Part shown: piece after piece, positions 1,586-51,267 of the stretch | Position numbering within the stretch: the stretch's first letter is position 1 | How the letters are laid out: each line of letters begins with the position of its first letter | IMG/VR virus record: IMGVR_UViG_3300020154_000003 | Coordinates: 124,001 to 188,000 of that record | Length of the DNA: 64,000 bases | Direction: 5' to 3' (one strand) | Position numbers and translations under genes: made by a program | Notes under the pieces: generated by a model | Told to the model about the DNA's origin: nothing | What the model saw: only the letters and a program-made list of their open reading frames with translations | Databases searched by the model: none

Positions 1586-1658
1586 GAGAGTATGGCTCAG
1601 TGGTTAGAGCAAGGACTTCTAAACTCCTAGGTCGTGGGTTCGAATCCCACTACTCTCT
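1586..1658 (+). tRNA. amber suppressor tRNA (anticodon CTA at 1619-1621)
   Basis: Acceptor GAGAGTA/TACTCTC, D stem GCTC/GAGC, anticodon stem AGGAC/CTCCT (C.C mismatch at 31-39) with loop TTCTAAA, variable loop AGGTC, T arm GTGGG-TTCGAAT-CCCAC. Confidence 0.8.
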
Positions 1659-1677
1659 CTCAATAAAATAAAAAGTT

Positions 1678-10503: not shown

Positions 10504-11379
10504 ATGACACTAATATTAGACCTCACCAAAGGAGTCACCGAAACCACAGCATACAAAGCATGGAAATTTCCGGGTGGCGAAATTCACTTCAAGTTCTCAG
10601 ATGAATTTATACGTTGGCTAAATTCTCACAGATCGCTCGAAATTCAGACCAGAATAAACACCTCAGATGATTTTCTGTTTTTACTTCTAGTAATTGATAC
10701 GTTGAAGAAGGATTATCAGAATCACACCATCGATGTTTTCATCCCTTATATGCTTTACCAGCAAGCAGATAGAGATTTCAGTGTTGGCGAATGTTTTAGT
10801 CTCAGAACTGTAACCAAAATTCTGAATGCCATTGGTGTAAATTCATACACGATTTACGATCCCCACTCAGATGTTACTCCAGCTTTACTTCAGAACTGTA
10901 AGGTTATCGACAATAGCGATTACATCAAATGGGTGCTTGAGCAACTACCTTCATTAGGTAAATATTCCAATGGATTCAACGTTGTTATGCTTTCCCCCGA
11001 TGCTGGTGCATATAAGAAAATCTATAAACTCGCCAATAAAATTCAATTCAAGGGTGAGGTTGCGTCAGCCAATAAATCTCGTTCGATTTCAACTGGAAAT
11101 ATAGACTCATTGGAACTGTCGAAACATGATTTCGAAGGTAAGGATGTGTTGATTGTTGATGACATCTGTATCGGTGGTAGAACCTTTATTGAACTAGCAA
11201 AGAAGTTGAAGGAACGGAATGTTGGTGATTTATATCTCGCAATTTCTCACGGCATTTTTAGTAACGGATATGATGAACTAAGTCTCTACTACAAAAAGGT
11301 ATTCACTACTAACAGTAGAAAAAATGAATACAATCACGAATTAATTTCAACCTTTAACATTTTTGGCGATAATGACTGA
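10504..11379 (+). CDS. ribose-phosphate pyrophosphokinase-like protein (candidate NARP1 Adps)
   Basis: FPGGEIH, PYMLYQQADR, DPHSDV, SPDAGA, IVDDICIGGRTF, HGIFS. Confidence 0.88.
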   Translation: MTLILDLTKGVTETTAYKAWKFPGGEIHFKFSDEFIRWLNSHRSLEIQTRINTSDDFLFLLLVIDTLKKDYQNHTIDVFIPYMLYQQADRDFSVGECFSLRTVTKILNAIGVNSYTIYDPHSDVTPALLQNCKVIDNSDYIKWVLEQLPSLGKYSNGFNVVMLSPDAGAYKKIYKLANKIQFKGEVASANKSRSISTGNIDSLELSKHDFEGKDVLIVDDICIGGRTFIELAKKLKERNVGDLYLAISHGIFSNGYDELSLYYKKVFTTNSRKNEYNHELISTFNIFGDND

Positions 11380-11791: not shown

Positions 11792-12213
11792 TAGTATTTG
11801 TGGCGACTCCATTTTGGAGTTTTGATAAAGAAGTGTCTGAACGAAGAACTGCGATAATAAGCAAGTATTGCGGGCAATTATTGCGTGAGGGTATTATGTG
11901 TACTTCGCCAGTTGTTTTTGGAGTAACTATACTGAAATATACTGACCTACCGGGAAATTTTGCCTTTTGGGATAAACTTAGTTTTACCACTTTGGCAGCT
12001 TCAGATGTGCTACACGTACTTATGCTCCCCGGATGGGATGAATCGAGAGGCGTTAGTGAGGAAATAAAATTCGCACTAGAAAGAAAAATACCAATAAAAT
12101 ATTTTGATGTTTCCGAAGATAGATATGGCAGTCCCACTTTCAAAGAAAATAGCAGATCAATAGCTATTGGCAACCTAATAAGAAAAATTAATCATAAAAA
12201 AAATAACCCATGA
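11788..12213 (+). CDS. DUF1937 / nucleoside 2-deoxyribosyltransferase-like protein
   Basis: VATPF...SPV...FW...LMLPGWDESRGVSEEIKFA. Confidence 0.7.
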   Translation: MIVFVATPFWSFDKEVSERRTAIISKYCGQLLREGIMCTSPVVFGVTILKYTDLPGNFAFWDKLSFTTLAASDVLHVLMLPGWDESRGVSEEIKFALERKIPIKYFDVSEDRYGSPTFKENSRSIAIGNLIRKINHKKNNP

Positions 12214-13781
12214 AAATGAATCCATTTTTAATGGCTGACTTTTACAAGATCGGTCACCCATTTCAATACCCCAAAGGTACAAATCTTGTTTATGCTAACT
12301 TAACACCACGTAATTCCAGAATCAAGGGAGTTGACAAGATGGTGTTCTTTGGCCTTCAATATTTTATCAAGCATTACTTGATTAAGTATTTCAACGAAAA
12401 CTTCTTCGATCTTCCGAAAGACGAAGTGATGAATTCATACAGAAGAAGAATTCTCACCTCATTAGGTTCCGATCTACCTTATTATGATCACATTGCAAAT
12501 CTTCACGATTTGGGTTATCTCCCAATCGAGATTAAAGCTTTGCCAGAAGGAAGCAAGGTGAAGATGCGTGTGCCAGTACTGACTGTCAAAAATACACACC
12601 CTGAATTTTATTGGTTGACCAATTTCATAGAAACAATCATGTCCGATATTGTGTGGCAACCATGTACCTCCGCTACTATTGCCCACGAATACCGTAAACT
12701 TCTCAACAAGTTTGGTGAAGAAACTGGTATGCACCCCGACTTTATTCAATGGCAAGGTCACGACTTCAGCTTTAGAGGTATGAGTTCCTTCGAGAGTGCA
12801 TATACTTCAGCTATGGGGCACTTATTATCTTTTACTGGCACTGACACCATTCCGGGGATTGATGCTCTTGAAACGTATTACAATGCTAATGCGGATTACG
12901 AATTAATTGGTGGTAGTGTCAATGCTACCGAACACAGTGTTATGTGTGCTGGTGAAAAGGATTCAGAGTACGAGACTTACAGACGTTTGATCTGTGATGT
13001 ATACCCTAAAGGCATCGTATCAATTGTTTCAGATACTTGGGATTTATGGTTCGTACTAACTCAGATCATACCTCAATTGAAAGAAGCGATTCTCAATAGG
13101 GAAGGTAAGGTTGTTATTCGTCCTGACAGTGGCGATCCTGTTAAAATTCTTACAGGTTACTTCAAGAACGAATTGACTGTGATCGATGGCAAATATTACC
13201 GTAACACTGATGTTGATGCTCATGATATTGACGCAACTAAGCTAACGCTTAAAGCAGGTGCCAAAGAAGTTGGTGAAGCTGAAAGAAAAGGTGTTATTGA
13301 GGTTCTTTGGGACGTGTTTGGTGGAACCATCACTGACAAAGGTTACAAACTACTGGACGAACATATTGGGGCAATTTACGGTGACAGTATCACACTTACT
13401 CGTGCAGAAGAAATTTGTCAGCGATTGAAAGATAAGGGATTTGCTTCACAAGTTGTACTTGGTATCGGTAGCTACACTTATCAGTACAACACCAGAGATA
13501 CCTTTGGTACTGCAATGAAGTCTACCTATGTTGAAGTTAACGGTGAAGGAAGAGAAATTTTCAAATCTCCTGCGACTGATGATGGAACTAAAAAATCTGC
13601 CAGAGGCTTGCTGAAAGTTGTGAAAGATGAGGACGGTGAATTCGTACTTGTAGATCAGGTGTCTTGGGAAGAAGAGGCTGAGGGAGAATTAACACCAGTC
13701 TTTAAGGATGGTAAGTTACTTGTTGACCAGTCATTGAGCGAAATAAGGGCAAGATTGAGTGAAGTAGTAGAGGTAGTATAA
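12210..13781 (+). CDS. nicotinamide phosphoribosyltransferase-like protein (candidate NARP1 Namat)
   Basis: ADFYKIGH..QYP, HDFSFRG, ATEHSVM, SIVSDTWD, IRPDSGDP, IYGDSIT, K.P.TD.G.KKSARG. Confidence 0.92.
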   Translation: MKMNPFLMADFYKIGHPFQYPKGTNLVYANLTPRNSRIKGVDKMVFFGLQYFIKHYLIKYFNENFFDLPKDEVMNSYRRRILTSLGSDLPYYDHIANLHDLGYLPIEIKALPEGSKVKMRVPVLTVKNTHPEFYWLTNFIETIMSDIVWQPCTSATIAHEYRKLLNKFGEETGMHPDFIQWQGHDFSFRGMSSFESAYTSAMGHLLSFTGTDTIPGIDALETYYNANADYELIGGSVNATEHSVMCAGEKDSEYETYRRLICDVYPKGIVSIVSDTWDLWFVLTQIIPQLKEAILNREGKVVIRPDSGDPVKILTGYFKNELTVIDGKYYRNTDVDAHDIDATKLTLKAGAKEVGEAERKGVIEVLWDVFGGTITDKGYKLLDEHIGAIYGDSITLTRAEEICQRLKDKGFASQVVLGIGSYTYQYNTRDTFGTAMKSTYVEVNGEGREIFKSPATDDGTKKSARGLLKVVKDEDGEFVLVDQVSWEEEAEGELTPVFKDGKLLVDQSLSEIRARLSEVVEVV

Positions 13782-14933: not shown

Positions 14934-15552
14934 AATATCATACATATTAATACTCTTATTAGTAATATTAACTTCCTTTAATTCAAAACCAGCAACTGGT
15001 TGTCTCGAACTCGATTTAATTCTCATCGGGGATTACTCGTCCAGTTTAAGGGGTCAAGAACATTATTTTGTAGGTGCATGTAGAACATTCGTTAAGAAAT
15101 TTCAATTATCTGAACAAACAATCAAAATTGGTATAGTAACCTTTAATGATACTGCAAAACTAATCAGTCCTTTAAGTAGTGATACTTCCTTTATCACTAG
15201 CAGAATTAATGAGTTGGCTGAAGAAATAGGTGAAGATTGGACTAATATGGAGAAAGGATTATTCGTGGCTTTTAATGAGTTCACAAATAACGGCAGACCA
15301 AATGCACAGAAAATGATTATAATCCTTTCTGACGGTGCAGTCAACGATCCGGGCGATAAAACTTCAGCACCCATAACTACGATGGAAATTATTCAACAAC
15401 TTAGAATGACTGGTATGGGTGTGTGTAGCATCTTAATTAAGAGCGGTGAAGAGGAACCAGAATTCATGAAAGCGATTTCATCAGGATGTTACGCAGAATC
15501 TAGCTACGAAAATCTAGCAATCGAATTGGCTAAATTAGATGTTTGTCTCTAA
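14923..15552 (+). CDS. exported vWA domain protein
   Basis: N-terminal signal-like hydrophobic segment; DYSSS, TNM, LSDG. Confidence 0.8.
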   Translation: MKNKISYILILLLVILTSFNSKPATGCLELDLILIGDYSSSLRGQEHYFVGACRTFVKKFQLSEQTIKIGIVTFNDTAKLISPLSSDTSFITSRINELAEEIGEDWTNMEKGLFVAFNEFTNNGRPNAQKMIIILSDGAVNDPGDKTSAPITTMEIIQQLRMTGMGVCSILIKSGEEEPEFMKAISSGCYAESSYENLAIELAKLDVCL

Positions 15553-16153
15553 AAAAAATGTGTGGAAGCCAGCTTCTCTGGATGTGATGCGTCAAATTGC
15601 AAACGCTGAGAAAGATTGGGCATCCTTACTGAAATCGGAGAACACATATAAAAAATTTTTCAAGAAATTGCTTTTTTGGCGTAAACCAAAAACACAATTC
15701 GAAGGAGTTACGTTTCCGGTAGTAAGAAAAGTCTTTGCTAATTTGATGGCTAACGATATTGTTGGAGTACAACCAATGGCAGCACCATCCAATGGTCTTT
15801 ATGCGAATTACATCACAATAACATTCAAACTTGGGAAACCAATTAAGCATAAAATTGTTGGAAAGACACCCGGAGAATATTTAATAAATTTAATACATGC
15901 TTGGAATAGTTTGCCTGATCGATTTGTGAAAGAGGACATTGTTGGTTACTATCACTATAAACTCGCGGCACTGCTTAAGGTTTATCCTACCATCCTCGAT
16001 GAGTATGAAACTGACGATTACACAAAAGATTTGATGTTTGTATTGGAAGGACAGAAGCCCAAACATAAATTTGAAGGTTACAAACCGATACCCCAAATTT
16101 TAAATGGTAATGATGGACATATACCGTTATGGCCTATTCCAAATAAAATATAG
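15539..16153 (+). CDS. protein containing a T4 gp23 major-capsid (Gol-region)-like segment
   Basis: FPVVRKVFANLMANDIVGVQPMAAPSNG. Confidence 0.65.
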   Translation: MFVSKKNVWKPASLDVMRQIANAEKDWASLLKSENTYKKFFKKLLFWRKPKTQFEGVTFPVVRKVFANLMANDIVGVQPMAAPSNGLYANYITITFKLGKPIKHKIVGKTPGEYLINLIHAWNSLPDRFVKEDIVGYYHYKLAALLKVYPTILDEYETDDYTKDLMFVLEGQKPKHKFEGYKPIPQILNGNDGHIPLWPIPNKI

Positions 16154-17657: not shown

Positions 17658-18044
17658 ATGGAACCAGCTAAGAATCTCTTGATATTACTTTTGGCAATGG
17701 GCGTATTTACCGCCCTTTGCTGTTTATTGGGGGAAATTATTTTCCGTTACTTGAAACGGTTAGGTCAAAAGCATATGATGACATATGCCGAATACATCCC
17801 TGACTGTACTATCGGTGAAAGGGACGATAATAGATTTTTTGTCGTTTCTGGAGTGATTCGTAAGGATGGAATATTCCACTCTGGATGGTTTGTCTATGAT
17901 AGAGAACTTAAAAAATATGTTGACGTTGATTTTTCAACCACGGATCATCCTCTCGGTGTAGCAAAAGATCGTGCAGGTCTTCTCAATCATGCCAGCAGTA
18001 ATCAACCATACAATAAAGTCGTTTGGGATTTTATACAAAACTAG
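17658..18044 (+). CDS. membrane-anchored hypothetical protein
   Basis: N-terminal TM segment; ends in TAG. Confidence 0.6.
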   Translation: MEPAKNLLILLLAMGVFTALCCLLGEIIFRYLKRLGQKHMMTYAEYIPDCTIGERDDNRFFVVSGVIRKDGIFHSGWFVYDRELKKYVDVDFSTTDHPLGVAKDRAGLLNHASSNQPYNKVVWDFIQN

Positions 18045-18066: not shown

Positions 18067-18378
18067 ATGAAAAAGAACAGACTCTTTGAAGTATTCGAGT
18101 ACGTTACTGGTGTTAAAATCAATGAAGACTTAACCTACGCTCACGTAGATGATGCTTCGCCTGAGCAAGATCAATCTCAGATCGGTACTGAAGTCAGTGA
18201 AGGTAGAGGAATATATAACTTTGACAACAAGCCCGGACAGTCCAAGAACAATTTCCTTCAGAACGAATGGTCGAAGAAATACAGAAGACAATTCGGTTCT
18301 TATCGAGAATATCTAGCTGCAATGGAAAGTAAGGCAGTATTGAATCCTGAAACGCAGACCTATCAGTGGTCTATGTAA
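18067..18378 (+). CDS. hypothetical protein (possible late gene)
   Basis: GTATTTAT at 18045-18052 upstream. Confidence 0.6.
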   Translation: MKKNRLFEVFEYVTGVKINEDLTYAHVDDASPEQDQSQIGTEVSEGRGIYNFDNKPGQSKNNFLQNEWSKKYRRQFGSYREYLAAMESKAVLNPETQTYQWSM

Positions 18379-19582: not shown

Positions 19583-21601
19583 ATGAAAGTAACGAAAGAA
19601 TATCTCAAGGCCAGAAACATCAGCGAAAACAACGGTGCTGTTCAAGCCATCCTGAAACTTACTGAAAAAAACCCAAATTATGAATTCTTTTTCATAAAAT
19701 CCCATTTTGGGACGGAGCACGTTGCCTTGAAAGATATTGAGGAAACCTTTAAAACCATGCGGGATAAAAACATTAAGGTTTCCCGGTCAGTTGATCAGTA
19801 CGTGAGATTTGTCGTTAAAGAAGCCTTCACCCATAAAGTCAACACTTATAATGATAAGGGTGAGATCACAGGCGAAAAGAAAACCGACTTTGAACAGGGT
19901 GAGGTCATTGATAAAAAACTCTATAAATCACTTCCTGACTTCGATAAAGAAAAGGTTGACGTTCGCACAGACTTCGAAGCTTTCTCTGATGAAATTCGGG
20001 ATGCGTTAACAAAAACGAACGCAAACAAAATTATCCAGCAATTCCCTGCAGCAGCTAAACATGTTGTTGAAAACTTAACTCCAGAAGAAAAGAAAGAATT
20101 TTACTTCAACTTGAATTCTTTGTTGGAAATGAACACCAAATATTTGGTGGTGAATCCCTTCGTAAAAAAATATAAAGTTGAACGTGGCGATAGAACCGAA
20201 GTCGCTGAAAAAACTTTCAACCGTGGAGCCAAACTCACTCTTGAAGTTTACAAAACTCTTACCGATGCACAAAGGGAGAATGTACTTGAAGAATATCAAA
20301 AACCCCTTCTGGCCTTCATTAAAAAATCTGCAAGGTATAAAAACAAAGAAGCATTGTTCTCTGATCTCAATGCTGCCATGTATTCTCTTTCAGGTGATGA
20401 GGAATACAAAAGCCTGATCGAGAGAATCGAAGATACGGAAGGTGCAATACTTGAAGGTCTGAATCCTGATAAGGGTATTGTGGTTGCCTCTGCTTTGAAT
20501 GCAGAAGCCTACAAGAAAATAGGTGGTAATAACACTAACCATTGTATTCGTGCTCAACACACCTTTTCTTCGTATGTTAAATTCGCATACAAGCAATATT
20601 TAATTACCAACACGAAATTGGAGCCTACTGATGACCTTCGCATTATCGGTATGACTATTGATGGGAGGGGCAACGTGACCCATGCTCACACTAAAAGTGA
20701 CGTTAACATCCGTGATAGAATATCTGGTATCCTATTAAAATGGAATATTGCTCAGTACGTTAAACCGATGAGTGAAGATGACATCATTGAGATGTTGTAC
20801 ATCGGTATCAATGATGGCACCATATTCACGGACAAGGAACGTTCTGATATGGTGGTTGCTTATCTCCCTAAACTGGATAAGACCAGATTTGAAAAGAAAA
20901 AGTTGTTGCAATTTATCCGTCATTGCCATGAGCCTAAAGAAATGATGGAGATTGTTAGAACTTCTCTGGACATGAGAAATTCTAAGGAATTCAGCGAGAA
21001 CTATGATTACTTGGCAAACAACATTTTGAAGTTGATTTCCGATGAAAATCAGTCTTACAATATCGTTCAGTCTTTTGTTGCGGAATACAACAACAAGGTT
21101 GGAATAACTCCTGAAGATGCAGTGACCATGCTGGTTAATAAATCCAAGTACATCCAACCTAATAAGTTGCTTGAAATTATTGGAAGAGATAAATTCCAGA
21201 CGTTCATAAAAGAATTTACTGAAGAGCAGTTCGAAAAAATATTGAACACTATCCCTCAATTCTTTATCAATTTTGTTAGGGATAGAAAGACTCTGAACAA
21301 CCGTGAGATCGTCAAAATCATTGCTGCGATGTATGAGTATGAAACAAGAAAAGACATCAGACAACTGGTTTTGATAAAAATCTACAAGAAAGGTTATTTT
21401 GATAACTTGGATTTGACTAGTCATCCTCAGTTGTTGAACTTAATTGTGGCTGACAATAATCCTTTGGACAATGCAATATTGGCCATTGCAGTTAAGTTAG
21501 GTCACAAGGACAATAAAATCAAGGTAGACGATAAGAAAATAGATTTCGCAAGTGCCATACAGTCAATAACCTCATCGTTAAAACCGTCTAGTCAACGGTA
21601 A
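19583..21601 (+). CDS. large hypothetical protein
   Basis: 672-aa ORF with internal repeats (FEQGEVI../FNRGAKL..) and no internal TAG. Confidence 0.85.
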   Translation: MKVTKEYLKARNISENNGAVQAILKLTEKNPNYEFFFIKSHFGTEHVALKDIEETFKTMRDKNIKVSRSVDQYVRFVVKEAFTHKVNTYNDKGEITGEKKTDFEQGEVIDKKLYKSLPDFDKEKVDVRTDFEAFSDEIRDALTKTNANKIIQQFPAAAKHVVENLTPEEKKEFYFNLNSLLEMNTKYLVVNPFVKKYKVERGDRTEVAEKTFNRGAKLTLEVYKTLTDAQRENVLEEYQKPLLAFIKKSARYKNKEALFSDLNAAMYSLSGDEEYKSLIERIEDTEGAILEGLNPDKGIVVASALNAEAYKKIGGNNTNHCIRAQHTFSSYVKFAYKQYLITNTKLEPTDDLRIIGMTIDGRGNVTHAHTKSDVNIRDRISGILLKWNIAQYVKPMSEDDIIEMLYIGINDGTIFTDKERSDMVVAYLPKLDKTRFEKKKLLQFIRHCHEPKEMMEIVRTSLDMRNSKEFSENYDYLANNILKLISDENQSYNIVQSFVAEYNNKVGITPEDAVTMLVNKSKYIQPNKLLEIIGRDKFQTFIKEFTEEQFEKILNTIPQFFINFVRDRKTLNNREIVKIIAAMYEYETRKDIRQLVLIKIYKKGYFDNLDLTSHPQLLNLIVADNNPLDNAILAIAVKLGHKDNKIKVDDKKIDFASAIQSITSSLKPSSQR

Positions 21602-21624
21602 TTTAAAATCCCCTATTTATAAGT

Positions 21625-22101
21625 ATGATGCCTCATAATTGGTGTCATACTTATTTTTGTATTATGAAACAACCTGACTCGCATAAATGGGAAATCCGCA
21701 CCGTCACACTAAGTTCTGACGAACTAAAAAAACAGCTAGGAGAAAAACGATTTGCTGCATTGATGGATGATATAAATAATAGATTGAATGTAACTATTAT
21801 TTACGAATTCTACGATGAGAATGATGACATGTTTCCTGATCAGGGAGCCTACGCACATGTCATAGGAGTAAAACCTTCAAATTTGAAAATTCAACTCAAC
21901 AACATGTCATCCTCAACTCTGAAAAAAATAATCTCGCAATCATTCGAGTCGATGGAAGAAAATCTAAAAAAGGTAATTGAAAGGCAGTCAAGGGGTGAGT
22001 ATACCTGTATTGGTTATAATGCTTACGCAGAAGATCGTAAAACATATACCATTCTGTACATTCAGTATAAACTTAAAAAGTTAGAAACAGAGGTTAATTA
22101 A
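21625..22101 (+). CDS. hypothetical protein, paralogous to 22104..22481
   Basis: Both share TxIYExYDExDxxF and YxExRK...I.Y.QYK. Confidence 0.6.
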   Translation: MMPHNWCHTYFCIMKQPDSHKWEIRTVTLSSDELKKQLGEKRFAALMDDINNRLNVTIIYEFYDENDDMFPDQGAYAHVIGVKPSNLKIQLNNMSSSTLKKIISQSFESMEENLKKVIERQSRGEYTCIGYNAYAEDRKTYTILYIQYKLKKLETEVN

Positions 22102-22103
22102 GA

Positions 22104-22481
22104 ATGGAACAATATGAGGATGAATTTGAAGACGATCAAGGGGATTTTTCTGATGATGATCCTGATCAAATAGATCAAATCGACAACAGGTTGTATCTCT
22201 ATTCTGATAATTACAATACCACCGTCATATATGAGTATTATGATGAAGAGGATAATTTATTTTTAGTTAAAGACAAAAAATATGTTGGACTTATAAGTAA
22301 GAGAAATATCCAAAGCATGGTTGACTTTTCTCGTACTGAAGAATACTTCAATGAAACGGAAAAACAAATTCAAAATAATGAAAATACTTTAATTTTACAT
22401 GCCATTCATAGCTATTGCGAATATCGAAAAGATAGTGCAATCGTGTATGTACAGTATAAAGTCAGTGCAAAAAATGAGTGA
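22104..22481 (+). CDS. hypothetical protein, paralogous to 21625..22101
   Basis: Shares the motifs above. Confidence 0.6.
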   Translation: MEQYEDEFEDDQGDFSDDDPDQIDQIDNRLYLYSDNYNTTVIYEYYDEEDNLFLVKDKKYVGLISKRNIQSMVDFSRTEEYFNETEKQIQNNENTLILHAIHSYCEYRKDSAIVYVQYKVSAKNE

Positions 22482-22734
22482 GAAAGAACTTAAGGATGAA
22501 TTAGAATACTGTTATAGCACCCTTGATACTGACAAGAATGGGGAAGATGAAGATTTATCGTACATTGACTATGATATGAGACAAGCTGATCTAGTCGATG
22601 CGTATGAAGAGTGGGAAGAACATAGTAGAAATATAATTTTCCAGAACACCCTCAATAAAATGCTTAAGAAGCAAATGAAAACTGAACGAAGAAAATATTT
22701 GAAATCGATCAATCAATTTTTAAAGTCCTAAAAA

Positions 22735-22971
22735 GTGTATTGTGCAAAACCATCCATAAATCTAAAACTAACCAGCATCGTAGTTCAAGCTGAGACAAGA
22801 AAATTACGTGCAGAATGGACACCTGAAGCAGTGATGGAAATAAATAATTTTATAGACATGGACATGGGTGTTAATGTAAATGAAGTTATGGTAGATATGT
22901 TGGTTGCAAATTTAAAAGAAAAGGAAATTATAAAATATAACGAACTCCTAAATGATTGGTTGAAACTATGA
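22735..22971 (+). CDS. small protein containing a second gp23 major-capsid-like segment
   Basis: LTSIVVQAETRKLRAEWTPE. Confidence 0.55.
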   Translation: MYCAKPSINLKLTSIVVQAETRKLRAEWTPEAVMEINNFIDMDMGVNVNEVMVDMLVANLKEKEIIKYNELLNDWLKL

Positions 22972-23496
22972 AAGGCGAAAAAGTAATTAATGAAACTATA
23001 AAATATCTCAACAATAATTCCAATAGGGTGGGGGAGAAATTAACCGAATATGATTGGCGCGAATGCTGTGACCTAATTATGTGCTTGGAGGAATTGTTGA
23101 AAACAGGAGTACTAAAAAATGTTGAACTACCTAAAAATAAATTATGAAATACGAATGGAGTTTAAGGAAGTACTGGAAGTCTTGGTTCATTCAAGATGTA
23201 AAAAAAATCTGGTATAAAACAGTGCATGGTATTGAATTAGGAAACTACAAAACCATCATCCCTAGTACTGGCAATGGTAGATTTTATTCCGTGAAAAGGA
23301 AAACAGCAATCTTCGAGATTACTGAAAAGAAAACAGGTAATTTGGTTAGGATTATTCCATACAAAGAAAACCACGGGTTCATGATTGAAAATTGGATGGA
23401 TGGAAAGTTGATCAGCAGGAAATGTTTGGGTTTCGAGGAATTATGGGTTGGTGCAGAAATTCATGAAAATGCTTAGTTAATTAAGTATTTATTGGT

Positions 23497-24309
23497 ATGG
23501 ATTTACGTAAACTAGTTCAGGAAGAGTTTGAAAATCAGATTGTACCGACACATTCTGGCCAATTCCTCTACCACGTAACCAATACCAAGAACTACAACGA
23601 CATAAAGTCCTATGGCCTGCTACCTCAATTTGGTGAGACCGTAAAACAAGCCTATGGCGATTCTTACGATCTGGATGGTGATGGAGATAACGAAGAACTG
23701 GTTAAATTGGATATTGATGGCCTGCTATTTTTCTCCGAGAAACCAATGCTTGGGTATTCTCAACCAATGCAGCAGAATTTTAAGTGGAATGAGGTACTGG
23801 TTGTGATTGTGGAAAAGAATGACACTATCTTTAGAAAGGTGGATTCTTACCCCAAATTCACTGATCATCAAGGTAATGAGGTGAGTTCTGTTAATTACAT
23901 ACACATCCATGATCTTCCTATAATCATTGAAACAGGAGATTGGTTTTCATTTGAAGAGCAGGAACCTGCCTACCTGCTTTATGGCGATCTCCTAATGAAA
24001 TTTCTGGAGAAAAACTTCCCCGATCTTATAGAAAAACACACTCCAACCTCCTTAAATGAGGGTTCCGACTTTGAGAAGTTAAAGAAAAATAAGGTAACTT
24101 TGACCGATGAGGAACGTGCTGAGGTCATGAAGCGCAAAGCTGTATGGCATATGGGGGCTGATGGGAAGGCTTCTCCTGCGGTTTGGAAGAGCGTAAACGA
24201 CAAAGGGGAGGTAACTTATGTTACCAATACTCACCGAGCCTATAACACAGCTAAAACGCTTAAAGGAGCCATTGGAAGGTATCATAAATTTATCAAAGGA
24301 ACTGCTTAA
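23497..24309 (+). CDS. ADP-ribosyltransferase/Tpt1-fold-like N-terminal domain fused to a C-terminal domain
   Basis: LYHVT...I.SYGLLP...FFS; preceded by GTATTTAT at 23485. Confidence 0.5.
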   Translation: MDLRKLVQEEFENQIVPTHSGQFLYHVTNTKNYNDIKSYGLLPQFGETVKQAYGDSYDLDGDGDNEELVKLDIDGLLFFSEKPMLGYSQPMQQNFKWNEVLVVIVEKNDTIFRKVDSYPKFTDHQGNEVSSVNYIHIHDLPIIIETGDWFSFEEQEPAYLLYGDLLMKFLEKNFPDLIEKHTPTSLNEGSDFEKLKKNKVTLTDEERAEVMKRKAVWHMGADGKASPAVWKSVNDKGEVTYVTNTHRAYNTAKTLKGAIGRYHKFIKGTA

Positions 24310-25102
24310 TTAAATGGATGAGGAATTATTATATCCATCAACTGGCTTGGTTTATGCTACAGATTATACTGCGACCTTCACCGAGCGATCCTTAGTAGAT
24401 AGAATTTATGTTGATGGTGAGATGTCAATGGCCCTAATGCTTCAAAAGATAAAAAATGATGAATATAACGCTTATAACGAATCAGTAATAAAATTTGCTT
24501 ATGGAGAATGAGATAGTTATTACCGAAATGCAAATGCCTGTTGATTATGTTGAAAACAGCACTGCGGAAAATGATTATCTGACAGCGTATATGGACACAT
24601 TACTTGAGATATGTCTAATAGAACAAGAGCAATCCCATCAAATAAAAAAAAGGCGAATGTTGCTCAAGAAAATTAAAGTTGAAGAACACAAAGCATACAA
24701 TAAACAAGTCAACCTTTTTATTGCTTCATGAAAAAAATGAAATTCTCTGATCGAGATATTTTTACTAAAATAAGATACACCGAAGGGAAAAAATATCGCG
24801 AAAACAATCCATTTTATTTCGAAACCCTTGAAGCATTTCTAGGGAAAAAAATATGTCTCTATAAACGAGACGGAGAATTTAGGTAAATGTTTATTTAAAC
24901 AATCGATTTCTGAAAGTAAACAACAAACCAGAAATACATCCCAACAAAATTAATCCATAACCTGCAATCGCTCTGAATGTTTGATTGCACAGATAACTAT
25001 CATTGCATTGCCAATCCAAAGTGTATATCAAACCAAGTCCGGGTAGTATTAGAAGTATTCCATACAACAAATCTCCTAGTCCTAAATTTTTAAAGATTTT
25101 TT

Positions 25103-47845: not shown

Positions 47846-48282
47846 GGTTCGTTTTGTGTTTGGTTATATGTATTATACGGCTGCTTCAATAAAAGGTTGC
47901 GATAATATAGGGTTATTTTTCAATTAATCCATATATCCATGCTCAATTGAAAAGTCACTTTCCTTTGCACCCTCATTCTCAATTAAGTGTGCCTTAACGC
48001 GATCAAAGTAGGCGTAGTTAGTCATATTACCCTGAACAATTCCCTCAGTAATTGTCCTTCCATTTTGTCTTAAGCGCATACCGATGCAGCAAGTTCCTTG
48101 GTCACCCATTTCAGATATGACCTCCTTTGCGATTTGTTTCAGTGTTATTGCGTCCATGTTTTTTTGTGTTTGTTAATATAGAGTTAAACGGCCATGCCCG
48201 CAAAAGGTTGCGTAATTAAGGATAAAAAAAGTTAAATTATTTTCACAAATAATGTAACCTTTGTGAATAGTTCCCGTTAATA

Positions 48283-48356
48283 TACATACGAATCAAGTAG
48301 GAGAGCCGAAAAAAAGGAAATTAGAAAACGGTTATTGCAGGGGTCTGTCTTGTTTA
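48283..48356 (+). ncRNA. candidate small RNA copy 3
   Basis: Promoter at 48254-48280; same conserved blocks as copies 1 and 2. Confidence 0.55.
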
Positions 48357-48474
48357 ACTTATGCCAGTACTGGAAAAAATATTTAAACTATTTTCGTGAA
48401 AAACGTAACCTTTGTACAAAAGTCAACGTATAAAGAGCATACGCAAACAACAAACAAAACAAACTTTACTAGCT

Positions 48475-49278
48475 ATGCGACACGACTTTAATTTTTCCTA
48501 CATTGGCGGTGTTAACCTGACTGCGAAAATTGCACACGGTAAAGAGTACGGTATTGATACTTATACTCTATATTTTGCTCCTTATAAATTGAGCGGGCAA
48601 AACGTGTGCGCAAAGGCAACAAAGGAATGTATAATGGGTTGCCTTAACACGTCCGGGCGGGTTAAAATGGACAAAAAGAACATTATTGTCAATGCCCGCA
48701 CACAAAGGACTATTGCCTTTTACGAACAAAGGGAAAAATTTATGACTTTAATGATTCATGAAATTTCCCTTGCAAAAAAGCGTTCGGAAAAAAAGGGGAC
48801 TATCTTTGCAGTCCGTTTAAACGGTACTTCCGACCTGTCCCCGGAAATTTTCAAAGCGTTCGGGCAAAATATTCTCGAATTGTTCCCGGATGTTCAGTTT
48901 TACGATTACACAAAGGTACTGAACCGCAAAAAGTTGGTTGAAAAATACCCAAATTACGACCTGACTTTTTCTTATACGGGCTACAATTGGTCTGAATGCC
49001 AGCAAGCGTTATCGGACAATGTTCGGGTCGCTGTAGTGTTTGACGTGAAAAGAGGTAAAGCCCTGCCTAAAACTTTCAACGGGTACAAAGTTATTGACGG
49101 TGATTTGAATGATTACCGTCCAATGGATGAAAAGAATGTGATTGTAGGCTTACGGTGGAAAGATATTGCAAACCGTGAAAATAATACCGCGATCAAAAAT
49201 AGTCCCTTCGTGGTAAAGGTAACGACTGAAAATGTCGTTACCACTTCGGACAATGTACATGAAACACAAACAGTTTAA
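48475..49278 (+). CDS. GP88-family phage protein
   Basis: NVC..AT..C...CL..SGR, VRLNGTSD, QFYDYTK, NYDLTFS, IDGD..D.R. Confidence 0.7.
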   Translation: MRHDFNFSYIGGVNLTAKIAHGKEYGIDTYTLYFAPYKLSGQNVCAKATKECIMGCLNTSGRVKMDKKNIIVNARTQRTIAFYEQREKFMTLMIHEISLAKKRSEKKGTIFAVRLNGTSDLSPEIFKAFGQNILELFPDVQFYDYTKVLNRKKLVEKYPNYDLTFSYTGYNWSECQQALSDNVRVAVVFDVKRGKALPKTFNGYKVIDGDLNDYRPMDEKNVIVGLRWKDIANRENNTAIKNSPFVVKVTTENVVTTSDNVHETQTV

Positions 49279-50601
49279 ATAGTACTGGCATGAAAACTAC
49301 AAACCTACTCAGAAAATACAATAGGCTTGAGGACAATAACGATCACAATGAAGCTGCTGCCTTGCTGGTTAATAACTTTGGTACGGATGACGAAAAGCAA
49401 ACCATGAAGGAAATTATTGCCCGTGCTGAAAAACAAAACGGCATGACCAGTGAGGATATAAAATTGAGGTATGAAATATCTCAAAAGTACTATCCGATAA
49501 TCACAGGCAAAGCCTATCCAATACAAAAGAAGTAACCCGGACAATGTTCACCCTTAATTAATAAAGCTATGGACACTCAAAAAATTGATAACCTTATCCA
49601 TCAATTGGATAGTATTGCACGAAGTTACGATGGCTATGAGTATGGCCTGCCTACTCATCATGACCATACGATGATTGAAATGGAGAATGCTATTAAACAT
49701 GCTTTCCCGGACAATGTACAGACCAGTACTGACAAGTCAGAAAAGATGCGGGCGGTATTGGAAAAATTGGTAGCTTCGTTCCCGGAAATGGATACCGATG
49801 AACCAATAGCTGGCAGCGATGCCGTTGACATCCTTTGCGGGATGTGGGATGAAATTAAAGACGCTATAAAATAACCTCCTATGAAAAATCCGATTATCAT
49901 AATTAAGGTTGGTAAAACTGTAATTGGAGATACTAGGGATTCACGTACAACTAATGATGCTAAGAGAAAATTTCTCAAGCAATACTCAGGGTACAATCCT
50001 AAATCAGTTACTGCGACTATTAAATATAACTAATATGGCAAAGAAAAATAAAATTGTCATCACTGACAATAAGGAAATGATAGCAGAGTTCATGAACTTA
50101 ATTAACAAACCCATCTACGAAAAGAAGTCCCCGATGTTCTTTAAGGATGAGGGAGGTTATTACGTAACCAAACTGACTGCCAGTAATGAGCCTGCTGACC
50201 CTAACAAAATGTATGAATTCGGTACGCTCACAGAGGTGCCAGTACCAAATAAAAGGACTGCCATCCAATACGCAAAACAATTCGGTCGCACTGCAATATT
50301 TGGTTAGAATAATGTAACCTTTACGTACAATGTACGTTAGATAACATATGAACAAACGCATCTTAGAATTCGCAAAGCTTCCCTTGGAGGAAAGAATCAA
50401 AGTGATCATGCTCTTCGGAGTATCCCTGATGACTATCCCTCATTGTGGCCTGATTGGTTCACTCTTTACCCTTGGCACTGAGTACGTTGAAATGATGGCT
50501 GATACCCGTACTGGTGAGATAGTTCACCTTGGCATCGCGGATTACAGCGACCTGAATAAGTACGCTGCTCACATCGACCTCGATATTTAATAAACTGTAC
50601 A

Positions 50602-51267
50602 ATGTACGTCAAGTATAACGATTTCAAAGATCATTGTGGATTACTGCCTGACTGGTACTCTGAAGAGATACATGATCAAATAAACAAATACCTGCCTGAA
50701 AGTAAGCTGCAGGCCGTTAAGTATCTGAAGGACACCTCCAAAGAATTCGAGACTGAAACCACGCATGGCTTAGGGCTGAAGGAATGTAAAGACATCGTTG
50801 ACTCGATGGCCACAGTACTGGCAAAGCTTGAGTCTATTCGAGAGGCATATGATCATGAACTTTCTTCATTTATTGAGCATTCATTAATTAAGAATACCAA
50901 TACCGCCCTGTCTCTAAAAGAATTCAAACAAAAAGCAAAAATCATTCTCCCAAACTGGTATACTGAATCTTTCCATCAAAAGGTCGTTAACCTGATGGTC
51001 AATGAACAGAAACTCAATGCCTGCAAATTGATCTGCGATACCTCATCCAGCTATGGAACCCGCCACATCTATGATCTGAAGTGGGCAAAGATTGAAATCG
51101 TTGACGTACTCAACGATATGATGAGCAAAATCAATAAAGATGAACTGTCTGGCAAAATTATATCCTTAATTGAGGATGGAGCCTTCCGCACCAGTATTTT
51201 AAAAGAAGTACTGGAATTCGTCCCAAAAGCGGAAATGCTTAAAATAGTTGAAAAATATTCACCATAA
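50602..51267 (+). CDS. protein with two ribosomal L7/L12 C-terminal-like repeats
   Basis: KLQAVKYLKD...GLGLKECKDIVD and KLNACKLICD...DLKWAK; each unit preceded by LPxWYxExxH. Confidence 0.55.
   Translation: MYVKYNDFKDHCGLLPDWYSEEIHDQINKYLPESKLQAVKYLKDTSKEFETETTHGLGLKECKDIVDSMATVLAKLESIREAYDHELSSFIEHSLIKNTNTALSLKEFKQKAKIILPNWYTESFHQKVVNLMVNEQKLNACKLICDTSSSYGTRHIYDLKWAKIEIVDVLNDMMSKINKDELSGKIISLIEDGAFRTSILKEVLEFVPKAEMLKIVEKYSP

What the first reader, a model, noticed from the sequence alone, without database searches (positions are those of the whole stretch)
22735..22971. Second isolated major-capsid segment in a 78-aa protein
Seen: NLKLTSIVVQAETRKLRAEWTPEAVMEI resembles the conserved gp23-family segment (V.A..RxLxAxW/YT.E.AQD), followed by a C-terminal helix shared with neighbouring small proteins. 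With 15707-15796, two different capsid epitopes are reused as small modules, suggesting a capsid-mimic strategy (inference).
Basis: partly seen in the sequence, partly recalled or inferred. Interest (0 to 1): 0.6.

Follow-up and report, generated by a model that had tools for sequence, protein, structure and literature searches.

The report
Small phage protein mimicking capsid segment
A 78-residue gene of a 366-kb soil jumbo phage is made from a 60-residue piece of the major capsid protein plus a tail helix shared with neighbouring small genes. It belongs to a widespread, undescribed family of such "capsid-shard" proteins that selection keeps intact and that may work by imitating the capsid protein.

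Summary
ORF 22735-22971 (+, 78 aa) matches Pfam Gp23 above the curated cut-off. In all 16 related jumbo-phage genomes searched, its best hit is the major capsid protein (MCP). It aligns to the phage's own MCP residues 315-373, equivalent to T4 gp23 about 250-308. That stretch holds a P-domain strand, the short acidic P-domain helix and most of the spine helix.

It is a real gene, not a relic:
- Orthologues sit in the same gene order in three relatives.
- The reading frame is intact, with dN/dS about 0.2.
- The start is a translationally coupled ATG in those relatives.

It belongs to an undescribed family:
- 85 clusters of 57-160 aa proteins, on contigs up to 392 kb.
- The genome holds four different MCP shards in four small genes within 25 kb.
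- Other phages carry arrays of small genes with up to three MCP segments; six segment types were seen in all.
- Many of these genes end in the same C-terminal motif, YNxx[VIL]xx[FW][LI].

Function is untested. My best guess is molecular mimicry of the MCP's inter-capsomer contact element, as a decoy for a capsid-sensing host factor or as a binder of capsomers. A complex prediction gave no verdict, and expression is not shown.

The parts
22735..22971 (+). 78-aa gene (shard D). GTG start 3 nt after the upstream stop; the TGA stop overlaps the ATG of the next gene.
   Evidence: Codon-frame score is typical of small genes of this genome. Orthologues in L133 and L145-L147 start with an ATG that overlaps the upstream stop. 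dN/dS is 0.20 against L145. In the ~87%-identical relative the only indel is -1 at 22735, which would turn AAAGTG into AAATG.
22756..22935 (+). MCP-like segment, residues 8-67. It equals own MCP 315-373 and T4 gp23 about 250-308: extended strand, short P-domain helix and spine helix.
   Evidence: The mapping to T4 goes through, with structural terms from PMC9546572. AlphaFold2 with the family alignment gives pLDDT 82: residues 1-29 extended, helices at 30-40 and 44-75.
22918..22968 (+). C-terminal helix tail (EKEIIKYNELLNDWLKL) carrying the shared motif YNxx[VIL]xx[FW][LI].
   Evidence: It is conserved in orthologue P0030/P0003 and in P0006, P0007 and P0013.
22474..22731 (+). Upstream 85-aa gene with the same kind of C-terminal tail (..RRKYLKSINQFLKS). 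It is in the same frame as the 78-aa ORF, separated by TAA plus one codon.
   Evidence: It is not one read-through gene: the -1 indel in the X3 relative puts the two ORFs in different frames, and the L145 relative has a whole extra gene between them.
22968..23147 (+). Downstream 59-aa gene, coupled by an ATGA overlap. The orthologue in L145 has 60 aa.
24314..24511 (+). 65-aa gene. The N-terminal part is one copy of a ~26-aa repeat found in three large proteins of the phage; the C-terminal tail has the shared motif.
24495..24731 (+). 78-aa neighbour with the shared C-terminal tail (..AYNKQVNLFIAS).
15539..16153 (+). Shard B gene (204 aa). Residues 52-88 (nt 15692-15802) equal MCP 68-104, the N-arm, which corresponds to the T4 Gol region.
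   Evidence: The L145 orthologue has 209 aa, with dN/dS 0.17.
18067..18378 (+). Shard C gene (103 aa). Nt 18118-18192 equal MCP 440-464; this is the weakest of the four matches.
   Evidence: E 0.039; E 0.012. The L145 orthologue is 86% identical, with dN/dS 0.06.

Best explanation
SHOWN.
- 22735-22971 is a genuine, selected, fast-evolving accessory gene of a 366-kb jumbo phage.
- Its product is modular. Residues 8-67 derive from a gp23-type major capsid protein: a basic P-domain strand (TRKLRAxW), the short acidic P-domain helix (PExxxE/D) and the spine helix. The last ~17 residues are a helix tail that many neighbouring small proteins share.
- It belongs to an undescribed family of 'capsid-shard' mini-proteins found in many large uncultured phages.
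- In this family the near-invariant residues (S14, V17, R22, W28, E31, D35) include the residues conserved across MCPs in this segment (R22, W28, E31, D35).

INFERRED.
- The protein works by molecular mimicry. It presents, free of the rest of the capsid protein, the element that in T4 holds neighbouring capsomers together at the quasi-threefold axes.
- It therefore competes with real MCP for whatever binds that element.
- The partner I think most likely is a host factor that senses or acts on newly made capsid protein. The shard, made from an accessory-gene island, would then be a non-activating decoy.
- The shared C-terminal helix would serve a common purpose, such as oligomerisation or docking to one common partner.
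For: Homology to the MCP.

Real gene under purifying selection:
- Synteny and intact frames in L133 and L145-L147.
- dN 0.39, dS 1.9, dN/dS 0.20. This is the highest dN of 15 neighbouring genes.
- No indel inside the ORF in a relative ~13% diverged at the DNA level. The two substitutions shown there are both synonymous.
- Coding-type codon usage.

Family:
- 75-, 78-, 95-, 86-, 66- and 62-aa relatives.
- 85 clusters found with the family profile.
- These are complete genes inside arrays of small genes.
- All 30 reported ESM Atlas hits are automatically named Gp23 domain-containing proteins; the top three have representatives of 70-86 aa and 56-80 members each.

Conserved residues.

Structure: the AlphaFold2 model gives an extended stretch, a short helix and a long helix, like the MCP element.

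Structural meaning in T4, from PMC9546572: the short acidic P-domain helix and a basic region of the P-domain strands make the inter-capsomer contacts. Head-length mutations A268, A275, D285 and D287 and gp31-bypass sites 292, 306 and 307 fall in the matching gp23 stretch.

Accessory character:
- Absent from 16 relatives whose MCP is 72-79% identical.
- Gene content varies, with an extra shard gene in L145.
- The wider region holds a Prs/Adps-family plus Nampt/Namat-family pair (as in phage NAD+ reconstitution), a QueC-like gene and tRNAs.

Specificity: the MCP is the only large protein with clear pieces (E < 1e-5) in tiny genes. A weaker repeat-motif match links the 65-aa gene to three large proteins.

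Precedent: capsid proteins are known triggers of abortive-infection systems, namely Gol/Lit (PMC3014915) and CapRel (PMC9712102, listed).
Against: - No partner is known. The ESMFold2 complex of MCP and the 78-aa protein scored 0.00, which is no verdict.
- Expression is not shown. The 'metatranscriptomic' runs that hold a relative are probably DNA, and only contigs were available.
- The shard is no closer to its own phage's MCP (28% identity) than to MCPs of unrelated phages (29-41% identity). A mimic of the phage's own capsid protein might be expected to track it.
- A decoy that resembled an activating peptide could harm the phage.
- Shards A-C lack the shared tail, so one common mechanism for all shards is not assured.
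- The host is unknown, because the source is a soil metagenome.
Confidence: 0.4

Rival explanations
1. Capsid-assembly modulator or poison. The shard docks on the edge of MCP capsomers where a neighbouring capsomer would bind. It either delays or steers assembly of the phage's own very large head, or blocks capsid assembly of competing gp23-type phages in the same cell.
For: The segment is the element that makes inter-capsomer contacts in T4 and where head-length mutations cluster. The other shards map to the two other head-length clusters, the N-arm and the P loop. The N-terminal part (INLxLxS) looks more like MCPs of other clades than like the phage's own MCP.
Against: Head assembly is a core function, yet the gene is absent from 16 relatives with 72-79% identical MCPs. 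It lies about 80 kb from the head gene, among accessory genes. The complex prediction gave no verdict.
Confidence: 0.2
2. Recycled coding material. The MCP piece is merely the raw sequence from which a new small gene was made. The function lies in the shared C-terminal helix, for instance a short docking motif for one common partner; its pattern recalls clamp-binding PIP-type motifs (my own recollection, not tested). It would have nothing to do with the capsid.
For: The same tail ends small proteins whose N-terminal parts are unrelated. The tail is enriched about 10-fold at C-termini of small proteins of this genome.
Against: The same MCP segment, starting at the same MCP position, recurs in 85 clusters from several phage lineages, with the MCP-conserved residues near-invariant. 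The 66-aa subfamily keeps the MCP segment but has a different tail. Several different MCP segments recur in independent arrays.
Confidence: 0.2
3. Head-internal or ejected protein. The shard or the tail serves as a docking tag that brings the mini-protein into the prohead, in the way T4 internal proteins use a capsid targeting sequence. The protein would be delivered with the DNA.
For: T4 targets proteins into proheads with a short terminal peptide (PMC10229621). Jumbo phages package many proteins (abstracts listed).
Against: There is no virion proteome for this phage or for any family member. The family is absent from cultured phages in the collection; the one full-length hit is an uncultured 635-kb phage. 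No protease-site analysis was possible.
Confidence: 0.1
4. Decaying pseudogene fragment of a second capsid gene, or the tail of a single 190-aa gene broken by an in-frame TAA.
For: The upstream ORF is in the same frame, with only TAA and one codon between. The Pfam match found by the genome search was drawn across the stop.
Against: The extension across the stop adds no score: 25.3 against 26.3 bits. In the X3 relative a -1 indel separates the two frames. In L145 a whole gene lies between them. dN/dS is 0.2 with dS near 2. There is no TAA-reading tRNA among the 54 tRNAs. The four shards are not colinear with the MCP.
Confidence: 0.03

Closest known systems
T4 gp23 / gp24 (Pfam PF07068, HK97-fold major capsid and vertex proteins)
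   Same: Residues 8-67 are homologous to the strand, short P-domain helix and spine helix of gp23-type MCPs. The conserved R, W/Y, E and D residues are kept.
   Different: It covers only about 60 of about 550 residues, with no A domain and no P-domain sheet partners, so it cannot form a capsid shell. The real MCP lies elsewhere, at G000 65673-67340. It also has an extra C-terminal tail that MCPs lack.
Gol peptide of T4 gp23 (activator of the Lit protease of prophage e14)
   Same: A short stretch of the MCP that acts on its own on a host system. The sibling shard B (15692-15802) corresponds to this region of gp23 (residues 93-122 from my own knowledge; biology from PMC3014915).
   Different: Gol is a part of gp23 defined by experiments, not a separate phage gene. 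The 78-aa protein carries a different gp23 region, about 250-308.
Capsid-sensing immunity such as CapRel(SJ46) (PMC9712102)
   Same: It shows that hosts detect major capsid proteins directly, which is the premise of the decoy idea.
   Different: No phage-encoded capsid decoy is described there. No such sensor is known for this phage's unknown host.
T4 internal proteins with a capsid targeting sequence
   Same: Small phage proteins with a short shared terminal peptide that determines where they go (PMC10229621).
   Different: The T4 signal is N-terminal and is cleaved off. Here the shared element is C-terminal, and no cleavage site or virion association is known.
Automatically named 'Gp23 domain-containing' small proteins in ESM Atlas and Pfam-annotated metagenome proteins; phrog_12830 (128-position 'major head protein')
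   Same: These are the same kind of object. The 78-aa protein falls among them.
   Different: They carry machine-given names only. In six full-text searches I found no paper that describes or tests them.

Membership tests
Pfam PF07068 Gp23 (major capsid protein) | Score at or above the curated gathering cut-off | tested here: met
   26.3 bits against 24.4
Pfam PF07068 Gp23 (major capsid protein) | Full-length HK97-type fold: most of the 376 profile positions, with A and P domains | tested here: not met
   Only profile positions 133-190 are matched and the protein has 78 aa. The model is an extended stretch plus two helices.
Pfam PF07068 Gp23 (major capsid protein) | Is the shell-forming gene of the head module | tested here: not met
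   The 556-aa MCP, next to a scaffold-like gene, lies at G000 65673-67340, about 80 kb away.
Capsid-shard mini-proteins (family defined here) | Complete small ORF (about 60-100 aa) that starts a few residues before the MCP segment INLxLxS..TRKLRAxWTPE | tested here: met
   Alignments A1 and A3.
Capsid-shard mini-proteins (family defined here) | Near-invariant S14, V17, R22, W28, E31, D35 | tested here: met
   The window protein has E at position 35.
Capsid-shard mini-proteins (family defined here) | C-terminal helix ending in a hydrophobic pair (YNxx[VIL]xx[FW][LI] or ..NIF.N) | tested here: met
Gol-type peptide (T4 gp23 residues about 93-122) | Corresponds to the Gol region of gp23 | tested here: not met
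   This ORF maps to gp23 about 250-308. Shard B at 15692-15802 is the one that maps to gp23 94-125.
Pseudogene or gene relic | Frame disruptions, neutral substitution pattern, no conserved ORF in relatives | tested here: not met
   Intact frames in three relatives and dN/dS 0.20
Anti-defence decoy | Binds and blocks a host sensor; rescues the phage on hosts that carry it | not testable with these tools
   The host and any sensor are unknown, and there is no cultured member.
Homing-endonuclease or intron footprint (captured exon flank) | An adjacent endonuclease gene or intron RNA | tested here: not met
   No endonuclease domain in the neighbours. No intron family in the window by Rfam.

The most novel reading that the evidence does not exclude
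Large phages carry cassettes of decoy mini-proteins. Each displays one conserved piece of the phage's own virion proteins, often on a common C-terminal helix. At least six different MCP segments are used, and possibly a repeat from large fibre-like proteins. The decoys would blunt host immune sensors, or rival phages, that recognise capsid proteins. This would be a counter-defence principle based on self-mimicry of the capsid.
Probability: 0.25. Interest if true: 0.9.

Novelty: categorically new. Interest (0 to 1): 0.75.

Why it matters
Major capsid proteins are among the best-documented triggers of bacterial abortive-infection systems. No phage-encoded answer that works at the level of the capsid 'epitope' is known.

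This work finds a selected, widespread, modular family of mini-proteins built from pieces of the capsid protein. The pieces include the elements that in T4 form the inter-capsomer contacts and carry the head-length mutations. That opens two experimentally tractable questions:
- Do phages decoy or shield capsid-sensing immunity with shards of their own capsid?
- Can free copies of inter-capsomer contact elements steer or poison assembly of HK97-fold shells?

Either answer would be new biology. It would also give short, portable peptides that bind capsomers or capsid sensors.

If the capsid piece turns out to be only recycled sequence, the family is still a clear case of new genes born from fragments of an essential gene.

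Tried and rejected
- AlphaFold2 on the single sequence gave pLDDT 47 and was uninformative. It improved to 82 only with the family alignment.
- Complex prediction of MCP with the 78-aa protein scored ipSAE 0.00 in both runs. That is no verdict, neither for nor against binding.
- Foldseek of the model against the PDB found no match at E <= 0.001.
- phmmer of the 78-aa protein against PDB sequences found nothing.
- Close-relative scans of viral contigs and metagenome contigs with the 78-aa protein, and the word search with the single sequence, found only the source contig. Megablast of 21500-25000 against phage records found nothing.
- Read-through of the in-frame TAA as one 190-aa gene is rejected.
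- Stop-codon recoding is not supported, despite two tRNAs with anticodon CTA.
- My first clade profile was contaminated by 19 wrongly extracted neighbour ORFs. It produced a false 'MCP paralogue' next to the MCP, which is really the scaffold-like gene. I rebuilt the profile.
- The giant proteins P0004 and P0005 in the representative search are spurious repeat-driven hits.
- A homing-endonuclease or intron footprint has no support.
- The sigma-70 and terminator scan and a T4-type late-promoter word count did not exceed chance or gave no timing information.
- PHROGs and Pfam did not identify the three large repeat proteins as fibres.
- The segment tree (36 residues) places the small proteins apart from the MCPs, but no branch supports were computed and the segment is too short to rely on.
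- Read laying was given 3,301 letters.

Full report
WHERE IT LIES. The window is bases 124001-188000 of a 366,038-bp virus record from a soil metagenome, rated 100% complete. The phage has 54 tRNA genes. Its gp23-type major capsid protein (MCP, 556 aa) lies at genome 65673-67340 on the minus strand, next to a scaffold-like gene. No cultured phage is close. The best MCP matches among 50,697 phage records are about 30% identical. IMG/VR holds a large clade of 250-365-kb contigs whose MCPs are 72-79% identical.

ORF 22735-22971 (+) encodes 78 residues.
- It passes Pfam's curated threshold for Gp23: 26.3 against 24.4 bits, E 6e-6, profile positions 133-190 of 376.
- It hits the PHROG for major head proteins.
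- Its significant matches among phage records are MCP genes.
- In each of 16 related jumbo genomes its best match is the MCP gene, at E about 1e-7 per genome.
- A profile of 62 clade MCPs was searched against every stop-to-stop ORF of the genome. It returns the MCP, then four small ORFs, then noise from E 0.2.

The four small ORFs are:
- Shard B: window 15539-16153, MCP 68-104, E 5e-9.
- Shard A: genome 121855-122145, just outside the window and among tRNA genes, MCP 491-543, E 2e-8.
- Shard D: this finding, MCP 315-373, E 9e-7.
- Shard C: window 18067-18378, MCP 440-464, E 0.012.

The four pieces do not overlap and all lie on the + strand within 25 kb. They are not in MCP order.

In an all-against-all comparison, no other large protein shows a comparable match in a tiny gene. 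The exception is a weak one. The 65-aa gene at 24314-24511 contains one copy of a ~26-residue repeat found in three large proteins of unknown function.

WHAT PART OF THE CAPSID PROTEIN. The phage's own MCP aligns without gaps to T4 gp23 across this stretch, with own residue 306 matching gp23 residue 242. Shard D therefore corresponds to gp23 about 250-308. According to the T4 head structure paper PMC9546572:
- This stretch holds the short, negatively charged P-domain helix and the start of the spine helix.
- The head-length mutations A268V, A275T, D285V and D287V/N and the gp31-bypass sites 292, 306 and 307 lie in it.
- Neighbouring capsomers are held together near the quasi-threefold axes by charge contacts between that acidic helix and a basic region of P-domain strands.

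That the basic strand meant there is the TRKLRAxW strand is my inference.

By the same mapping, shards B and A cover the other two head-length clusters: A94 and G97 in the N-arm, and T457, R460 and G461 in the P loop. These are also the best-conserved blocks of the family, so detection bias may explain part of this coincidence.

With the family alignment, AlphaFold2 predicts residues 1-29 extended, a short helix at 30-40 and a long helix at 44-75, at mean pLDDT 82. This is the order of elements in the MCP.

IT IS A REAL GENE.
- The operon is tightly packed with overlapping stops and starts, and the ORF fills its slot exactly.
- Codon usage in frame is like that of other small genes. No wrong-frame window of the long genes reaches its score.
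- Three relatives at different distances keep it.
  - Soil runs X3 and X4 hold a relative about 87% identical in DNA. One contig spans 21868-23070, and all of its indels are accounted for. None lies inside the ORF. The single-base loss at 22735 would turn the GTG start into ATG (an inference from the placement of the gap) and puts the upstream ORF in another frame. The two substitutions listed inside the ORF are both synonymous third positions.
  - Contigs L133 and L145-L147 have the same gene order. Their flanks are 81-82% identical, but identity over this gene is only 72%. They encode a 75-aa orthologue, 51% identical, whose ATG overlaps the upstream stop.
- Against L145 the gene has dN 0.39, dS about 1.9 and dN/dS 0.20. 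This is the fastest-changing protein among 15 neighbours, yet it is clearly constrained. The shard B and C genes give 0.17 and 0.06.
- The idea of one 190-aa gene broken by TAA is excluded by these relatives and by the lack of any TAA-reading tRNA.

IT BELONGS TO A FAMILY.
- The exhaustive search of 1.84 billion representatives found small relatives of 62-95 aa. They start a few residues before the same MCP segment.
- Two giant proteins in that list are spurious repeat hits.
- A profile of seven members recovered 85 clusters of 57-160 aa, mostly 66 aa. All are unnamed or called hypothetical, and they lie on contigs up to 392 kb.
- A few of the 85 are probably truncated MCP genes.
- All 30 reported ESM Atlas hits are automatically named Gp23 domain-containing proteins; the top three have representatives of 70-86 aa and 56-80 members each.
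- The members examined are complete genes inside runs of small genes, not MCP genes cut by contig ends.
- Near-invariant positions are S14, V17, R22, W28, E31 and D35; R22, W28, E31 and D35 match residues conserved across MCPs.
- None of the 16 clade genomes examined has the gene.
- Among deposited phage genomes, only an uncultured 635-kb phage shows a full-length match to the 66-aa type.

SHARDS COME IN ARRAYS AND SHARE A TAIL.
- L145 has an extra 79-aa gene directly upstream of the orthologue. It carries MCP 401-442 (E 3e-11).
- L134, a different phage, has three consecutive small genes with MCP 316-353, 407-438 and 9-37.
- L136/L137 have MCP 314-385, MCP 400-443 and a weak MCP 84-111.

So at least six distinct MCP segments recur as small genes.

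Many of these genes, and other small genes beside them whose N-terminal parts are unrelated, end in the same helix..E..YNxx[VIL]xx[FW][LI]... In this genome a pattern for that tail occurs in the last 16 residues of 13 of 388 small proteins. Shuffles give about 1 on average and never more than 5 in 300 trials. The pattern was derived from three of the 13.

Shards A-C lack this tail.

The 66-aa subfamily has a different basic tail. It sits in a conserved trio between a protein of about 444 aa and an unknown protein of about 407 aa. ESM features liken the 444-aa protein to RNA ligases, which is a lead only.

ORIGIN. Shard D is as far from its own MCP (28% identity, 42-43 bits) as from MCPs of unrelated phages (29-41% identity, 42-46 bits). 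Its first residues (INLxLxS) resemble other clades more than its own. Shards A and B are closer to the phage's own clade. A tree of the 36-residue segment puts the small proteins apart from the MCPs, but no branch supports were computed and the segment is too short to rely on. I read this as an old derivation followed by independent evolution, not a recent copy. There is no sign of an endonuclease or intron that could have carried exon flanks.

HOW IT MOST LIKELY WORKS.

Shown:
- A selected, modular mini-protein that keeps the MCP-conserved residues of the strand and short-helix element.
- A patchy, accessory distribution.
- Fast evolution.
- A location in a region that also holds a Prs/Adps-family plus Nampt/Namat-family gene pair, a QueC-like gene and tRNAs. 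That gene pair is of the kind used in phage NAD+ reconstitution (10.1101/2024.02.11.579819).

Inferred: it acts by imitating that MCP element.

I rank the readings as follows:
- Decoy for a host factor that recognises new capsid protein: 0.4, taking the mimicry idea as a whole. Precedents for such sensing are Gol/Lit (PMC3014915) and CapRel (PMC9712102).
- Capsomer-edge binder that modulates or poisons assembly: 0.2.
- Function residing only in the shared tail: 0.2.
- Packaged internal protein: 0.1.
- Relic: 0.03.

Nothing here tests binding. The one complex prediction gave no verdict. Expression is not shown.

NOVELTY. Six full-text literature searches found no description of such proteins. 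Databases carry them only under automatic names. The family and its architecture are, as far as I can tell, undescribed. The functional reading remains a hypothesis.

Noticed in passing
window 1586-1659, and genome 123540-123613 (outside the window): Two tRNAs with anticodon CTA (amber-suppressor type) among the 54 tRNAs. TAG is the rarest stop (54 of 611 crude genes). Reading TAG as sense barely lengthens ORFs, so recoding is not indicated.
   Followed up: partly
window 10504-11379 and 12210-13781: A Prs/Adps-family gene and a Nampt/Namat-family gene lie 0.8 kb apart. This is the kind of pair used by phages to rebuild NAD+ against NAD-depleting defences. Which pathway it belongs to was not determined.
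   Followed up: partly
window 24314-24511: A 65-aa gene whose N-terminal part is one copy of a ~26-residue repeat (..YAxDYSxxFTxxSLVDxxYV..). The repeat occurs at least five times in the 1372-aa protein at genome 350863-354981, and also in the proteins at 48071-51010 and 342695-346447. The C-terminal part has the shared tail. The large proteins could not be named.
   Followed up: partly
whole genome; in the window at 17658-18044, 22735-22971, 24314-24511 and 24495-24731: The C-terminal motif [YF][NKDLQ]xx[VILM]xx[FWY][LIVAT] occurs in the last 16 residues of 13 of 388 small proteins, against about 1 expected. The same tail ends small genes of the unrelated contigs L134, L135 and L137. Its partner is unknown.
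   Followed up: partly
L145 9765-10004 (also L146 and L147): The syntenic relative has an extra 79-aa gene carrying MCP 401-442 plus the shared tail. It sits between the orthologues of 22474-22731 and 22735-22971 and has no counterpart in the window.
   Followed up: yes
L140-L144 and L138 (66-aa and 62-aa subfamily): The mini-gp23 gene sits in a conserved trio of about 444 aa, 66 aa and about 407 aa, followed by a gene of about 180 aa. ESM features liken the 444-aa protein to RNA ligases, but Pfam and PHROGs do not confirm this.
   Followed up: partly
window 21625-22101 and 22104-22481: Two adjacent paralogous small proteins ending ..Y[VI]QYK.. (E 4e-4). Homologues sit next to shard genes in L134 and L137.
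   Followed up: no
window 23497-24309; L135 563-892: The C-terminal ~100 residues of the well-conserved 270-aa protein (91% identical in L145) occur as a separate 109-aa gene beside shard genes in another phage contig.
   Followed up: no
window 23070-23139: In the ~87%-identical relative of runs X3 and X4 this stretch, the end of the 59-aa gene, is replaced by about 70 unrelated letters.
   Followed up: no
genome 121858-122148 (outside the window, 1.9 kb upstream of its start): Shard A: a ~96-aa ORF among tRNA genes whose last 47 residues match MCP 490-543, covering the P loop and the C-terminus (39% identity, E 1.5e-7).
   Followed up: partly
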